In this document: positions 44,469 to 47,699 of the stretch, piece after piece | How the letters are laid out: each line of letters starts with the position of its first letter | Numbering within the stretch: the stretch's first letter is position 1 | IMG/VR virus record: IMGVR_UViG_3300042558_003926 | Location: 62,001-126,000 of that record | Direction: 5' to 3' (one strand) | DNA length: 64,000 nucleotides | Position numbers and translations under genes: made by a program | Notes under the pieces: generated by a model | Database searches by the model: none | The model's input: only the letters and a program-made list of their open reading frames with translations | Told to the model about the DNA's origin: nothing

Positions 44469-44476
44469 GATATATA
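44469..44476 (+). promoter_or_regulatory. Late promoter motif GATATATA
   Basis: Immediately after a stop codon, upstream of 44495. Confidence 0.6.
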
Positions 44477-44494
44477 GATCAAATAAGGAAAGAA

Positions 44495-44739: not shown

Positions 44740-45450
44740 ATGAATTTAGTCGGAATAGATTTTTCGATCAACTCGCCAGCTTTCTGTTGTCTTAAAGATG
44801 GTGTATACACATGGGGTTCTGTGACCAGATCCGAGCGATCCAAAGAATCCCTAATCAAGAACACAAAGAAGCCATATTACTGGTTAGACTGTGACCCAAA
44901 TTTTACTCTGGATTTTATAGAGAAACAAGATTTACCTGAAGACTATAGCGGAAGAGAAAGAATGAAGATAGGGTACTTTTTAAGCATCGTAGATGGACTT
45001 TGGGACAGCATTAAGGGTATAATGGGTAATTCAGATTTTAGTGTGGCTATGGAGGGTTTAAGCTTCTCTTCGAACGGAAACGCACTAATAGATATTTCGA
45101 TGGCAACATCTTTGCTAAGAGAAAGAATAATCAGAGAGGTTGGTGTGGATTCGTTTTACGTTTTCTCTCCAACCAGTATAAAAAAGTTTGCATTAAAGGG
45201 CAATGCTAAAAAAGATGAGCTTTACGAAGCTCTATGTAATTTTAAAGAGGACGAAACAAATTTAGAGGTATTTACTAGAATGTTAGCAACCAACAAGGAA
45301 GAATGGGTAACTAAAGCCAAACAGGTCAATAAACCCATTGATGATATTGTTGATGCAACTTGGATTAATTTGTATTTAAAAAAGGAATTAGAGGGAATTT
45401 ATGAAATTAAGAGAAAATTGGAAACCGAAAAAGCTTCTCCTACGATCTGA
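44740..45450 (+). CDS. RuvC-like Holliday junction resolvase
   Basis: VGIDFS (D), AMEG (E), PTSIKK..G.AKK and DDIVDA (DxxD) RNase H-fold motifs. Confidence 0.8.
   Translation: MNLVGIDFSINSPAFCCLKDGVYTWGSVTRSERSKESLIKNTKKPYYWLDCDPNFTLDFIEKQDLPEDYSGRERMKIGYFLSIVDGLWDSIKGIMGNSDFSVAMEGLSFSSNGNALIDISMATSLLRERIIREVGVDSFYVFSPTSIKKFALKGNAKKDELYEALCNFKEDETNLEVFTRMLATNKEEWVTKAKQVNKPIDDIVDATWINLYLKKELEGIYEIKRKLETEKASPTI
45253..45281 (+). promoter_or_regulatory. Putative middle promoter GAAAC-N18-TAGAAT inside the resolvase gene
   Basis: Same spacing as three intergenic copies; upstream of the gp32 leader. Confidence 0.5.
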
Positions 45451-45514
45451 TATCTTCGGAATCGTTATAAATAAAAAATCACGCAACGTTATAAATCTTA
45501 GGGATGGACCATAG
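45401..45514 (+). CDS. Putative 37-aa leader peptide MKLRENWKPKKLLLRSDIFGIVINKKSRNVINLRDGP*
   Basis: Translated by hand; GAGGG 5 nt upstream of the ATG; absent from the ORF track (<60 aa); ends within the structured leader. Confidence 0.4.
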   Translation: MKLRENWKPKKLLLRSDIFGIVINKKSRNVINLRDGP

Positions 45515-45555
45515 ATCCAATCCCTCTTATTGTGGGCTATCCAATCGTCCTAAGA
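45496..45555 (+). promoter_or_regulatory. Structured RNA leader of gp32 (alternative hairpins / possible pseudoknot)
   Basis: TCTTAGG/CCTAAGA outer stem; AGGGATGGA can pair with either TCCAATCCCT or TCCAATCGTCCT; followed by about 50 nt of A/T tract. Confidence 0.55.
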
Positions 45556-45607
45556 ATTGGAACAAAAATAAAAATTTAAATAAAAACTAAAATTAATTTA
45601 AAAAATC

Positions 45608-46582
45608 ATGAGCAATTTAGACATTTTTAATTTGGACGCAGAGTCATTTGTAACAAAGACTAACCAAGCAGGAGGATCGAAAGATCTTGAATTTTACAAG
45701 CCTTATCCAGAAGATGGAAAGGATGGAGTTTATAAATCATTAATCAGATTTATCCCTAATTCAGAAAACCCAGCAAAATCCAAAATCCACAAATACTATG
45801 TGTATTTGAACGACCCAGTAAGTGGAAATGGATTTGCAGTAGATTGTCCTTCAACAGTTGGTAAAAAATCTATTCTTAAGGACCTTTTCTGGAAATTGAA
45901 AAATTCACATTCAGCAGCTGATCAAGAATTGGCAAAGAGTTTTTCTAGAAAGGAAGATTTCTATTCACTAGTTCAAATCGTACAAGATAAGAACAACCCA
46001 GATTTAGAGGGAAAAATTATGATCTTTAAGTTTGGAAAGAAAATAAATGAAATGATTGAGGCACAGCTTCAGCCAGAGTATGGCGATGCTTGTAATCCTT
46101 ACGATCTTTTCGAAGGTAGAGAATTTGCTATCAGTGTAAGAAAAGTTGGTGAGTGGAATAACTACGACCTATGTTCATTCGTAGGTGAAAGAACACCAAT
46201 TAAAATCGAGGGATCACAAATGAAGAAAAACCAAGAGGATATGAATAAAATCTTGGAATACTTAAAGACAGGTCCTAGAAATCTATCATCTTTCGATTAC
46301 AAAGATTGGGATGACGAGGTAAACGATAAAGTTATGGCGGTAATCAGAAATACTGTACCAGAGCAAAGAATCGTAAACGAGATAGTAGGAGCTGTTTCTT
46401 CCGCACCTTCTAAACCAAATCCGGTTCAGCAGCCGCCAGTATCTACCCCTAGCTCATCTTCGCAAATGTTAGAAGAAGTTTCTAACACTAAAGTCGGAGG
46501 ACAAACACCGAAAGAGACCTCGTATGAAGCTCCTTCTACGTCGTCTTCTACATCATTAGATGATCTTTACGCAGATCTTTAA
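45608..46582 (+). CDS. Single-stranded DNA-binding protein (T4 gp32-like)
   Basis: LIRFIP, DCPSTVG, GKIMIFKFGKKI, NPYDLFEGREF, WNNYD; acidic tail LDDLYADL. Confidence 0.9.
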   Translation: MSNLDIFNLDAESFVTKTNQAGGSKDLEFYKPYPEDGKDGVYKSLIRFIPNSENPAKSKIHKYYVYLNDPVSGNGFAVDCPSTVGKKSILKDLFWKLKNSHSAADQELAKSFSRKEDFYSLVQIVQDKNNPDLEGKIMIFKFGKKINEMIEAQLQPEYGDACNPYDLFEGREFAISVRKVGEWNNYDLCSFVGERTPIKIEGSQMKKNQEDMNKILEYLKTGPRNLSSFDYKDWDDEVNDKVMAVIRNTVPEQRIVNEIVGAVSSAPSKPNPVQQPPVSTPSSSSQMLEEVSNTKVGGQTPKETSYEAPSTSSSTSLDDLYADL

Positions 46583-46596
46583 TTAAAATTATAAAT

Positions 46597-46629
46597 TGGG
46601 GGCAAGTCTCTGGGCTGCCCCCATTTTTT
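46597..46629 (+). terminator. Intrinsic terminator after gp32
   Basis: TGGGGGCA...TGCCCCCA stem followed by TTTTTT. Confidence 0.75.
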
Positions 46630-46634
46630 ATATT

Positions 46635-47699
46635 ATGGAGATATCAAAGGTAGAATCTTTAGTAAGAGAAGTTCTTACTAGACAATTTCCAGGTAATCCC
46701 GGAAAGCAGATAGTTTACAAAGCTGGAAACAGACTTAATGTATCCTGTCCGTATTGTGGGGATTCTAATGACTCCAGAAAGAAAAGGGGTAATTTTTACC
46801 TAGATACGTTAGCTTATAAGTGCTATAATGGTGGATGTGGTATCTATAAGGATTCTATAAGTTTCTTTAAGGATTTCTCCGTATATTCAAAATTATCCAG
46901 CAACGAAAAAAGTGAGATTAGATCAATACTAGATGAGAATAGAGGGAAGAGAAGAAGCGTGTATGGTAATATCGACATTTCTCTATTTTTCGAGAATGAT
47001 ATAAACGAAATTCTGATCAGCAGATCTGATTTTATGGAAAAGCTAGGTCTTCGTAATGTTTTCGGATCTACCATACAAAGATACATCCAGAGGAGACATC
47101 AGAAAATGGATAATCGATTTGCTTGGGATGCCAAGAAAGAAAAGATATTTTTATTCAATCTTACACCTGATGATAAGATAATTGGTCTACAGGTAAGAAA
47201 TATGCAATCAGTTAAAGGAAGTTCAAAGTATCTAACATATAAGCTGAGCGGAATATATGAAAAACTTCTTAGAGTTACCGACGAGGAAACTTTAAACCGT
47301 GCTAGAGAGGTTGATCCAATCTCCCATGTTTTTAATATAGGGACCCTGGATTTCAGCTCCCCTATTACTGTTTTTGAAGGACCAATGGATTCCTGGTTTT
47401 GGAACAATTCAGTAGGACTATGCTCCATAGAAAATAAGTTTCCGTTTGAGGTTGAAGGAGTTAGATATTGGTACGATTGGGATAGAGCTGGCATAGAAAA
47501 AAGCATGGACTTACTAAGTAAGGGGGTTTCTGTTTTTAATTGGGGAAAATTCTTAGAGGAAAATAACATAACAAAAAATAGAAAATGGGATTTGAATGAC
47601 TTGGTCGTTCATCTCAGATCAACCGGAAAAAAGATAAAGAGATTGGAAGGTTATTTTACTGATGATATATTAGACTTAAGATATTTTATCAATGAGTGA
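46635..47699 (+). CDS. DNA primase (T4 gp61-like)
   Basis: Zn ribbon CPYCGDS...YKCYNGGC; TOPRIM VFEGPMDS and YDWDRAG; WDLND. Start reassigned to ATG 46635. Confidence 0.9.
   Translation: MEISKVESLVREVLTRQFPGNPGKQIVYKAGNRLNVSCPYCGDSNDSRKKRGNFYLDTLAYKCYNGGCGIYKDSISFFKDFSVYSKLSSNEKSEIRSILDENRGKRRSVYGNIDISLFFENDINEILISRSDFMEKLGLRNVFGSTIQRYIQRRHQKMDNRFAWDAKKEKIFLFNLTPDDKIIGLQVRNMQSVKGSSKYLTYKLSGIYEKLLRVTDEETLNRAREVDPISHVFNIGTLDFSSPITVFEGPMDSWFWNNSVGLCSIENKFPFEVEGVRYWYDWDRAGIEKSMDLLSKGVSVFNWGKFLEENNITKNRKWDLNDLVVHLRSTGKKIKRLEGYFTDDILDLRYFINE

What the first reader, a model, noticed from the sequence alone, without database searches (positions are those of the whole stretch)
45401..45607. Unannotated RDGP-stop leader peptide overlapping mutually exclusive RNA structures upstream of gp32
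Seen: a 37-codon ORF (45401-45514) ends ...VINLRDGP*. Its last codons (CTT AGG GAT GGA CCA TAG) form the 5' arm of a structure that can pair with either TCCAATCCCT (short hairpin) or TCCAATCGTCCTAAG (long hairpin). The loop CCATAG can also pair with TTGTGG (pseudoknot-like). An A/T tract then leads to the gp32 ATG, and a middle-promoter motif at 45253 lies upstream. Known: T4 gene 32 is autoregulated through a leader pseudoknot plus an unstructured tract; arrest peptides end in RAGP (SecM), RAPP-like motifs or Pro-stop (TnaC). Inference: a ribosome-stalling attenuator coupling SSB synthesis to translation status, possibly layered on gp32 autoregulation.
Basis: partly seen in the sequence, partly recalled or inferred. 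Interest (0 to 1): 0.68.

Follow-up and report, generated by a model that had tools for sequence, protein, structure and literature searches.

The report
Conserved short ORF upstream of gp32
The 37-codon reading frame in front of this jumbo phage's single-strand DNA-binding (gp32) gene is a real, translated, lineage-specific mini-gene built on the start of a lost sugar-isomerase gene; its R-D/A-G-P-stop end looks like known ribosome-arrest motifs, but nothing yet links it to control of gp32.

Summary
The ORF (45401-45514, ...LRDGP-TAG) exists, but its first 50 nt lie inside a RuvC-like gene.

**It is coding.** In nine distinct close relatives the frame, ATG and stop position are kept. Substitutions fall on third codon positions. 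dN/dS is 0.10 for the last 15 codons and 0.23 for the overlap part.

**Origin.** The ATG is the start codon that more distant relatives use for an intact gmhA (phosphoheptose isomerase) gene between the RuvC-like gene and gp32. Other clades carry neutrally decaying gmhA stubs (dN/dS 0.54-1.05). Only this clade turned its stub into a selected 37-38-residue peptide. A profile search of 1.84 billion proteins found no other relatives.

**RNA.** Covariation supports local hairpins at 45442-65, 45500-25 and 45540-61.

**Leader.** The 46-nt A/U tract evolves about three times slower than synonymous sites. It resembles the unstructured half of the T4 gene 32 operator.

**No expression platform.** There is no terminator, and no helix masks the gp32 start. 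A modelled stalled ribosome leaves gp32 start accessibility unchanged. No promoter motif was found at 45253.

**Verdict.** The ORF is a real small gene overlapping the gp32 leader. A stalling attenuator is possible (about 0.3) but unshown.

The parts
44469..44477 (+). Phage promoter-like motif GATATATAG. It is the nearest upstream copy and probably drives the 79-aa ORF, the RuvC-like gene and the short ORF on one transcript.
   Evidence: ATATATA occurs 96 times in the genome. Of these, 75 are intergenic and 51 lie within 60 nt of an ATG on the same strand. The site is listed at window 44470.
44740..45450 (+). Upstream 236-aa gene, a RuvC-like Holliday junction resolvase. Its last 50 nt overlap the short ORF.
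   Evidence: phrog_159 at 3.5e-15. It lies upstream of gp32 in 123 of 161 related loci.
45401..45514 (+). Short ORF of 37 codons, MKLRENWKPKKLLLRSDIFGIVINKKSRNVINLRDGP-TAG, in the +1 frame of the RuvC-like gene.
   Evidence: Frame, ATG and stop position are kept in nine distinct relatives. dN/dS is 0.23 (codons 1-17), 0.68 (18-23) and 0.10 (24-38). The same ATG starts gmhA in relatives.
45442..45465 (+). Hairpin H0 around the RuvC-like stop codon (ACGAT/ATCGT plus an inner extension). It lies in the hypervariable linker codons of the short ORF.
   Evidence: The stem covaries: two pairs changed on both sides and 100% of cells are paired. The loop is the fastest-evolving stretch at 1.62 substitutions per column. 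Equivalent hairpins with other sequences occur in distant relatives (read directly).
45466..45482 (+). Invariant block TATAAATAAAAAATCAC inside the ORF. It carries a nucleotide-level constraint. It may be a variant promoter (NATAAATA) and/or the 5' arm of helix P1.
   Evidence: 0.18 substitutions per column, with none at the five synonymous sites of ATA AAT AAA AAA TCA. (G/C)ATAAATA sites lie at promoter-like distance from other genes. Function is inferred.
45479..45535 (+). Candidate helix P1, TCACG (45479-83) with TGTGG (45531-35), enclosing H1.
Evidence: Predicted by RNAalifold. All cells are paired but nearly invariant, with one G-U to A-U change.
45500..45525 (+). The 5' arm is the codons Arg-Asp-Gly and the loop holds the Pro codon and the stop.
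   Evidence: 86% of cells are paired and two pairs changed on both sides.
45540..45561 (+). Hairpin H2, TCCAAT-N10-ATTGGA, directly 5' of the A/U tract.
   Evidence: 98% paired. A-U changes to G-C in four sequences, plus one C-G to U-G.
45562..45607 (+). 46-nt A/U-rich, G-free leader tract with UUAAA and UAAA repeats, ending at the gp32 start. No Shine-Dalgarno sequence.
   Evidence: 0.46 substitutions per column against 1.29-1.34 at gp32 third positions. It is one of three such tracts in the genome. A related RGAAAC-plus-A-rich leader is kept across clades of 66-77% gp32 identity.
45608..46582 (+). gp32-family single-strand DNA-binding protein gene (324 aa).
   Evidence: PF08804 at 1.3e-12 and phrog_224 at 1.6e-35.
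46598..46629 (+). Intrinsic terminator-like hairpin GGGGGCA...TGCCCCC followed by a T-run, after gp32.
   Evidence: Read directly. The hairpin plus U-run was aligned to a terminator in an Rfam sub-threshold match.

Best explanation
The feature is a genuine, translated, lineage-restricted small gene that overlaps the long 5' leader of gp32. It is not a classical attenuator.

**Shown**
- The ORF uses the start codon, and about the first eight codons, that related phages use for a gmhA (phosphoheptose isomerase) gene. That gene sits between the RuvC-like gene and gp32 in those relatives.
- In this clade gmhA is gone and a 37-38-codon frame remains.
- Since that loss, the peptide has been under purifying selection as strong as that on intact gmhA. 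Stubs left in other clades decay neutrally.
- The frame runs through a covarying hairpin whose codons are free to change. It then crosses a 16-17-nt block frozen at nucleotide level.
- It ends in R-D/A-G-P-stop, in the loop of a maintained hairpin.
- Downstream lie a second covarying hairpin and a strongly conserved 46-nt A/U tract that reaches the gp32 ATG.

**Inferred**
- The hairpins plus the A/U tract are the gp32 leader. [quoted passage not shown]
- The frozen block may hold a gp32-proximal promoter.
- The ORF's 3' end overlaps the leader in the way T4 segG (ORF32.1) overlaps the gene 32 pseudoknot.
- The product, a very basic 37-residue peptide (net charge about +7), most likely acts as a small protein of the replication/recombination module. 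No expression platform couples its translation to gp32.
For: **Coding selection**
- Fitch counts by codon position are 2/4/18 for the last 11 codons plus stop (P=3.6e-5). In the overlap they are 6/11/20 in the ORF's phase, which is 20/6/11 in the RuvC-like phase.
- The control spacer gives 21/25/22 and gp32 gives 13/4/129.
- dN/dS is 0.10, 0.23 and 0.68 by segment.
- Controls: intact gmhA 0.16-0.21; stubs in three other clades 0.54-1.05 with no periodicity.

**Origin**
- The +1 frame from an ATG 46-55 nt before the upstream stop is open in nearly all relatives. It is a 197-204-aa SIS protein in several of them.
- That protein matches solved GmhA structures at 7e-71.
- Profile comparison aligns only residues 1-8 of the short peptide.

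**Orphan status**: the profile search of 1.84 billion representatives finds only the family itself.

**Structures and leader**. Typical promoter-motif-to-ATG distances in this phage are 11-32 nt, against at least 93 nt of leader here.

**No platform**.

**T4 parallel**: PMC535899.
Against: - The C-terminal R-D/A-G-P-stop is unique in the genome and resembles proven arrest cores. A plain small protein has no need for it.
- The stop codon sits in a maintained hairpin directly upstream of a gene whose T4 homologue is translationally controlled, which hints at a cis role.
- AlphaFold gives no confident fold (pLDDT 66, pTM 0.30).
- No homologue with known function exists.
- Translation is inferred from substitution patterns in only nine sequences. 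No RNA or ribosome data could be obtained.
Confidence: 0.5

Rival explanations
1. Cis-acting arrest (leader) peptide. Ribosomes translating the ORF on the polycistronic RuvC-like-to-gp32 transcript pause at R-D/A-G-P-stop. The pause is either SecM-like (Gly in the P site, Pro-tRNA in the A site) or at termination after Pro. The parked ribosome melts P1 and H1 at the 5' edge of the gp32 leader. This would change gp32 output, for example by removing a nucleation structure for gp32 autorepression, by shielding the mRNA, or by blocking Rho as TnaC does.
For: - Arg34, Gly36, Pro37 and the stop position are invariant, with synonymous changes at Arg, Pro and the stop. RAGP is exact in 2 of 9 sequences.
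- The most constrained part is the C-terminal 15 residues, the part that would lie in the exit tunnel.
- RAGP supports arrest in several contexts. Asp at the Ala position is partly tolerated in RAPP peptides, and RAGP-like strings are avoided in proteomes (PMC12992588).
- NSP-stop and NAP-stop peptides of Bacteroidota stall with the stop codon in the A site (PMC10987492).
- The host is probably Bacteroidota.
- The motif is unique in the genome. The peptide is an orphan, as leader peptides usually are. The stop codon lies in a maintained hairpin.
Against: - There is no terminator.
- gp32 start accessibility is unchanged by a modelled stalled ribosome in seven clade members.
- The alternative long hairpin is unsupported.
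- C-over-G enrichment after the stop is only at the 90th-97th percentile, a weak rut candidate.
- The SecM upstream determinants (F..WI..GI) are absent.
- The RDGP variant, found in 7 of 9 sequences, is untested in the literature read.
- The N-terminal half is also under peptide-level selection.
- A gp32-proximal promoter inside the ORF would make most gp32 mRNA lack the ORF's start.
- The motif is absent from all other clades of the family.
Confidence: 0.3
2. Non-functional relic. The ORF is just the leftover 5' end of the lost gmhA gene. It stays open by chance and by constraints on the overlapping RuvC-like gene, promoter and hairpins.
For: - It shares its ATG with gmhA of relatives.
- Several other clades carry such relics of 41-106 codons that evolve neutrally.
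- The block ATAAATAAAAAATCA is constrained at nucleotide level.
- The hairpin codons vary freely.
Against: - Third-position bias and dN/dS of 0.10 lie in the part downstream of the RuvC-like gene. No such signal appears in the adjacent spacer.
- In the overlap, the substitution pattern fits the ORF's frame better than the RuvC-like frame.
- An in-frame indel occurs in the fastest-evolving segment.
- RNA or DNA elements do not give a 3-nt periodicity.
Confidence: 0.07
3. The conserved frame is read as a C-terminal extension of the RuvC-like protein through a +1 frameshift, or the periodicity comes from an antisense ORF (45388-45486, minus strand).
For: - The ORF is in the +1 frame of the RuvC-like gene and overlaps its last 17 codons.
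- The antisense frame shares its wobble positions with the ORF and is open across it.
Against: - No slippery site is conserved: CCGAAAAAGC in the window is GTGAAACAGC in L009.
- The ATG is invariant and is a proven gene start in relatives.
- The antisense frame has no conserved start. Met is missing in the window and in L014, and the TTG is lost in L087.
- The antisense frame has stops just upstream in L011 and L086, and needs more amino-acid changes than the sense frame.
- The antisense frame cannot explain periodicity at 45487-45514.
- All neighbouring genes are on the + strand.
Confidence: 0.05

Closest known systems
T4 gene 32 translational operator (5' pseudoknot plus more than 40 nt of unstructured UUAAA/UAAA tract including the start site), and T4 ORF32.1/segG, whose 3' end overlaps the pseudoknot (PMC535899; PMC3014915)
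   Same: - The downstream gene is a gp32-family SSB.
- The leader is unusually long.
- A structured element (H2, with P1/H1) directly abuts a 46-nt A/U tract with UUAAA and UAAA repeats that runs into the ATG.
- The tract is under strong nucleotide-level selection.
- The slot between the upstream replication/recombination gene and gene 32 is a variable-cargo site. A cargo ORF's 3' end overlaps the structured part of the leader.
   Different: - No pseudoknot could be shown, only hairpins.
- There is no Shine-Dalgarno sequence (Bacteroidota-style initiation).
- This gp32 lacks the T4 N-terminal KRKST motif: it starts MSNLDIFNLDAESF, and the T4 motif is recalled from general knowledge.
- Autorepression is untested.
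- The overlapping ORF is a 37-codon peptide, not a homing endonuclease.
SecM / RAPP-type arrest peptides (core RAGP, RAPP, RGPP) (PMC10951299, PMC10951233, PMC12992588)
   Same: - The C-terminal core is R-A-G-P in two clade members and R-D-G-P in the rest.
- Arg and Pro are invariant.
- A hydrophobic residue precedes Arg.
- The ORF is short and lies upstream of a regulated gene.
   Different: - Pro is followed directly by a stop codon.
- The SecM upstream determinants are absent.
- The peptide has no signal or TM segment.
- The downstream gene is not a Sec/YidC component.
- No start-masking helix is opened by the stalled ribosome.
[quoted passage not shown]
   Same: - Pro is conserved as the last residue before the stop.
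- Residues a few positions upstream are conserved.
- The likely host phylum is the same (Bacteroidota).
- C-terminal Pro is otherwise depleted in this phage's proteins (5 of 348).
   Different: - The motif is R-D/A-G-P, not N-S/A-P or the TnaC pattern.
- The stop is UAG or UAA (RF1-type), not UGA.
- No ligand or secretion logic is apparent.
- The element is phage-encoded.
- Only a weak rut-like C-rich patch follows the stop.
Small ORFs born from remnants of decayed genes (pseudogene exaptation)
   Same: - It reuses an ancestral start codon and translation-initiation region.
- The rest of the peptide has no detectable homologue.
- It is young and clade-restricted, yet under purifying selection.
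   Different: The sister lineages are unusually well controlled. They show intact gmhA, several stages of neutral decay, and this single exapted version at the same genomic slot.

Membership tests
SecM/RAPP-like arrest peptide | C-terminal core R-A-(G/P)-P with essential Arg and Pro | tested here: inconclusive
   RAGP in L009 and L086. RDGP in the window and six other distinct sequences. Arg, Gly and Pro are invariant. Asp is only shown to be partly tolerated in RAPP contexts.
SecM/RAPP-like arrest peptide | Arrest-essential region N-terminal to the core (SecM F150xxxxWIxxxxGI) | tested here: not met
   The peptide reads ...IVINKKSRNVINL before RDGP, with no F/WI/GI pattern. A different conserved upstream segment (INKKS.N.IN) is present.
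SecM/RAPP-like arrest peptide | A stalled ribosome unmasks the start region of the downstream gene | tested here: not met
   P(unpaired) of the gp32 start region is 0.56 free versus 0.54 with 45494-45524 forced single-stranded. Six relatives behave alike.
SecM/RAPP-like arrest peptide | Ribosome stalling demonstrated (toeprint, peptidyl-tRNA) | not testable with these tools
   No sequencing runs could be obtained. This needs in vitro translation.
TnaC-type / Bacteroidota Pro-stop termination arrest | Conserved Pro immediately before the stop, with the arrest depending on the stop codon | tested here: inconclusive
   Pro-stop is invariant in nine sequences and the stop varies TAG/TAA. Dependence on the stop cannot be tested here.
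TnaC-type / Bacteroidota Pro-stop termination arrest | Rho loading site next to the stop, or a Sec-related downstream gene | tested here: not met
   C minus G over 46-78 nt is only at the 90th-97th percentile. The downstream gene is an SSB.
Transcription attenuator (trp type) | Intrinsic terminator between leader ORF and gene, with a competing antiterminator | tested here: not met
   No terminator-like site lies in 45451-45607. H2 is followed by an A-run. The alternative long hairpin has no comparative support.
T4 gene 32 autogenous translational operator | Downstream gene encodes a gp32-family SSB | tested here: met
   PF08804 at 1.3e-12 and phrog_224 at 1.6e-35.
T4 gene 32 autogenous translational operator | At least 40 nt of unstructured A/U tract with UUAAA/UAAA repeats that includes the start site | tested here: met
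   45562-45607 is 46 nt, G-free, and has two UUAAA and several UAAA. Mean P(unpaired) is 0.66. It evolves at 0.46 versus 1.3 substitutions per site.
T4 gene 32 autogenous translational operator | RNA pseudoknot directly 5' of the tract | tested here: inconclusive
   Hairpins H1 and H2 are supported. The loop-to-upstream pairing that would make a knot (TCTTAGG/CCTAAGA) is only 82% paired with broken pairs, and it would leave no linker between the stems.
T4 gene 32 autogenous translational operator | gp32 binds the leader and represses its own translation | not testable with these tools
   Needs footprinting and reporter assays.
GmhA (SIS-domain phosphoheptose isomerase) | SIS fold with the GNGGS...DA.HF motif | tested here: not met
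   The window ORF shares only residues 1-8 with the relatives' GmhA and has no Pfam hit. It is a derivative of the gene's start, not a member. The relatives' gene is a member.

The most novel reading that the evidence does not exclude
This would be a phage-encoded nascent-peptide arrest element. The R-D/A-G-P-stop peptide, born from the start of a lost gmhA gene, parks ribosomes on the structured 5' domain of the gp32 leader in a Bacteroidota jumbo phage. It thereby tunes SSB synthesis, for example by dismantling the nucleation structure for gp32 autorepression or by protecting the polycistronic mRNA. I found no report of an arrest peptide in a virus of bacteria, and none tied to a replication protein.
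Probability: 0.25. Interest if true: 0.8.

Novelty: new variant of a known kind. Interest (0 to 1): 0.55.

Why it matters
The case is unusually clean. A protein-coding mini-gene arose from the stump of a lost gene, and sister lineages show the intact gene, neutral decay and the selected stump at one genomic slot.

The product carries a motif, R-A/D-G-P followed by a stop, that is known to jam ribosomes and is avoided in proteomes. It sits on the leader of the SSB gene, the classic example of translational autoregulation in phage T4.

If the peptide stalls ribosomes, arrest-peptide regulation would extend to phages and to DNA replication proteins, in a host phylum whose translation initiation is atypical. 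If it does not, it remains a tractable example of de novo small-protein birth. It also marks the gp32 leader of this large, uncultured phage family as a candidate T4-like operator without a Shine-Dalgarno sequence.

Tried and rejected
- **DNA search against phage records.** blastn of the locus gave no match. Only distant protein matches appeared, to huge phages, Lak phages and cyanophages.
- **Rfam.** Nothing at gathering score in the window, and only chance-level hits near the locus.
- **Single-sequence folding.** Not better than shuffles.
- **The search for homologous proteins.** I replaced it with an exact look-up and a profile search of all representatives.
Counted and not above controls.
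- **H-type pseudoknot from H2-loop pairing.** Rejected as unsupported, and sterically strained with a zero-length third loop.
- **Antisense ORF as the source of the periodicity.** Rejected.
- **+1 frameshift extension of the RuvC-like protein.** No conserved slippery site.
- **Nucleotide homology of the spacer to the gmhA body or 3' end.** None beyond an 11-nt ATAAAAAATCA match to the start of the post-gmhA leader in L021, z=1.7.
- **Rut-like C-rich region after the stop.** Weak.
- **Stalled-ribosome refolding.** No effect on the gp32 start.
- **AlphaFold of the peptide family.** Low confidence and uninformative.
- **TAG recoding.** Rejected. The standard code fits (TAA 228, TAG 68, TGA 52), there is no suppressor tRNA, and the stop is TAA in three clade members.
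- **ORF 45504-45590 (28 aa).** Its ATG is lost in L009 and L086 and the spacer shows no periodicity.
Full report
**Setting.** The window is bases 62001-126000 of a 289,651-bp virus record rated complete. GC is about 36% and nearly all genes are on the + strand. The standard genetic code fits: stops are TAA 228, TAG 68 and TGA 52, and no suppressor tRNA is present. Only 9% of genes have a Shine-Dalgarno-like motif, and upstream regions are A-rich around -12. One relative was binned with a Saprospirales MAG. A Bacteroidota host is therefore likely, but this is inferred.

The local gene order is tail tube, a 79-aa ORF, a RuvC-like resolvase (44740-45450), gp32 SSB (45608-46582) and a primase.

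**Checking the observation.** The 37-codon ORF at 45401-45514 ending LRDGP-TAG is there. The short hairpin, the duplicated ATCCAATC and the A/T tract are all present.

On its own the 181-nt region folds no better than shuffles (z=-1.13). No Rfam family matches.

The 'middle promoter' at 45253 is GAAACAAATTT inside the RuvC-like gene. It matches neither the sigma-70 scan nor the phage's own promoter-like motif GATATATA. That motif occurs 96 times; 75 copies are intergenic and 51 lie within 60 nt of an ATG. The nearest upstream copy is at 44470.

The exact peptide already exists as a gene call on 25 public contigs.

**Relatives.** gp32 searches of viral, metagenome and genome collections gave 161 loci of 66-100% protein identity. 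In 123 of them the RuvC-like gene lies upstream, with a spacer of 40-690 nt.

The +1 frame opening at an ATG 46-55 nt before the RuvC-like stop is consistently the long open frame. In several clades it is an intact 197-204-aa gene. That gene carries a SIS domain and matches solved phosphoheptose isomerases (GmhA) at 7e-71. Other clades carry shortened versions of 41-106 codons from the same ATG.

The window's ORF uses that ATG. A profile comparison aligns only residues 1-8 with GmhA.

**The ORF is coding in its own clade.** Nine distinct sequences form the window's clade, with 83-94% nucleotide identity in the flanking genes. All keep the ATG, the frame and the stop position, through a one-codon indel. 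All end in L/F-R-D/A-G-P-stop.

Parsimony counts by codon position:

| Region | Pos 1 / 2 / 3 | Note |
|---|---|---|
| Last 11 codons plus stop | 2 / 4 / 18 | P=3.6e-5 |
| Overlap part, ORF phase | 6 / 11 / 20 | same sites read 20 / 6 / 11 in the RuvC-like phase |
| Remaining spacer | 21 / 25 / 22 | control |
| gp32, first 100 codons | 13 / 4 / 129 | control |

dN/dS estimates:

| Sequence | dN/dS |
|---|---|
| ORF codons 24-38 | 0.10 (P=1e-7) |
| ORF codons 1-17 | 0.23 |
| ORF codons 18-23 (hairpin linker) | 0.68 |
| Intact gmhA in relatives | 0.16-0.21 |
| Stubs in three other clades | 0.54-1.05, no periodicity |

So this clade, and only this clade, has kept its stub as a selected peptide.

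An antisense ORF shares the wobble phase. It lacks a conserved start, has stops in two members and needs more amino-acid changes. A profile of the peptides finds nothing else among 1.84 billion representatives. AlphaFold gives no confident fold.

**Nucleotide-level elements inside and after the ORF** (substitution rates, pairing):

| Element | Coordinates | Evidence |
|---|---|---|
| H0 hairpin at the RuvC-like stop | 45442-65 | stem covaries; loop runs at 1.62 subs per column |
| Invariant block ATAAATAAAAAATCAC | 45467-82 | no change even at synonymous sites |
| H1 hairpin | 45500-25 | 86% paired; two pairs changed on both sides |
| H2 hairpin | 45540-61 | 98% paired; A-U to G-C in four sequences |
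| A/U tract | 45562-45607 | 0.46 subs per column vs about 1.3 at gp32 third positions |

- **Invariant block.** It may be a variant NATAAATA of the promoter motif. It may also be the 5' arm of an invariant helix with TGTGG at 45531-35.
- **H1.** Its 5' arm is the codons Arg-Asp-Gly. Its loop holds the Pro codon and the stop.
- **A/U tract.** It is one of three such tracts in the genome. Some form of it, RGAAAC plus an A-rich run, persists across all clades.
- **All local helices together.** Covariation exceeds all 500 shuffles, with the usual caveat that the sequences are related.
These do not exceed the controls.

**Mechanism.** The leader has the layout of the T4 gene 32 operator: a structured element followed by more than 40 nt of unstructured UUAAA/UAAA RNA that includes the start site. 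T4 also shows a cargo ORF (segG) whose end overlaps the structured part (PMC535899). That parallel is an inference.

For an attenuator, an output stage is missing:
- There is no terminator.
- A ribosome modelled on the ORF's end leaves the gp32 start equally accessible in seven clade members.
- The C-rich patch after the stop is only a weak rut candidate.

On the other side:
- R.GP-stop is unique among 878 small ORFs. RAGP and RDGP are absent from the proteome, and C-terminal Pro is rare at 5 of 348 genes.
- RAGP is a proven arrest core and Asp is partly tolerated at the Ala position in RAPP peptides (PMC12992588).
- Bacteroidota have Pro-stop termination-arrest uORFs (PMC10987492).

I put about 0.5 on a trans-acting small protein that merely overlaps the gp32 leader. 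I put about 0.3 on a cis-acting arrest peptide. The remainder goes to a relic, a frameshift extension or other readings.

**Limits.**
- The clade has only nine distinct sequences.
- Translation is inferred from substitution patterns.
- Host assignment is indirect.

Noticed in passing
window 6135, 9539, 16439, 23240, 37108, 44470, 49937, 58167, 62358 and about 50 more sites in G000: A strong phage-specific promoter-like motif, GATATATA(G/A/C), sits 11-32 nt upstream of start codons. Many sites are only 11-14 nt away, which implies leaderless or near-leaderless mRNAs. Relatives outside the clade have this motif 65-100 nt upstream of gp32.
   Followed up: partly
L021:2345-2938, L023:2329-2931, L068:2297-2899, L035:2646-2909, L020 and L043 clades, L061:2468-2932: The slot between the RuvC-like gene and gp32 is a variable-cargo site. 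It holds intact gmhA (phosphoheptose isomerase), gmhA truncated inside the SIS motif region, neutrally decaying 81-106-codon remnants, or an unrelated 149-154-aa gene.
   Followed up: yes
G000:C1:146574-147065 (L165:275-766), outside the window: The phage genome encodes a full-length tmRNA (Rfam RF00023, 85.5 bits, E=1.6e-33). ARAGORN predicts the tag EEVELAVAA. This ribosome-rescue RNA sits in the same genome as a Pro-stop ORF. Any link is speculative.
   Followed up: partly
G000:C1:2-700, outside the window: An array of at least 17 copies of a repeat containing GGTTCATCAGG lies at the left end of the record.
   Followed up: no
window 45608-45637 and all related loci: The first 10 codons of gp32 (ATGAGYAATTTAGACATTTTTAAT...) have a lowered synonymous rate (0.80 vs 1.34). 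They are nearly identical at nucleotide level across clades of 66-77% protein identity. The constrained start region therefore extends into the coding sequence.
   Followed up: partly
window 45397-45410 with 45593-45606, and 45385-45404 with 45605-45632: The start region of the short ORF is complementary (12 of 14, all A/U) to the gp32 start region. The MFE of the polycistronic RNA pairs the two. This may be chance in A/U-rich sequence.
   Followed up: no
about 45-60 nt upstream of the gp32 ATG in nearly all loci (window 45558-45566, GGAACAAAA): A conserved RGAAAC(A/T) element opens the A-rich gp32 leader in almost every clade, at a variable distance from promoter-like motifs. Its function is unknown.
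   Followed up: no
L058, L071, L074, L082, L141, L144 (about 60-85 nt upstream of the gp32 ATG): In these clades gp32 has GATATATAG followed at once by a hairpin TCTAAG-N16-CTTAGA, with CCTAGG/CTTAGG and TCTAGG/CTTAGA variants. This looks like a 5'-terminal stem-loop on the gp32 mRNA, then an A-rich leader with AGGA-like motifs.
   Followed up: no
window 46598-46629: A classical intrinsic terminator (GGGGGCA...TGCCCCC plus T6) follows gp32. The primase gene most likely starts at the ATG at 46635 rather than the TTG at 46596.
   Followed up: no
L164 (CALAZP010000190.1): A 64-kb contig carrying a relative of this phage family (gp32 67% identical) is binned in an uncultured Saprospirales MAG. Together with the lack of Shine-Dalgarno motifs, this points to Bacteroidota hosts.
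   Followed up: partly
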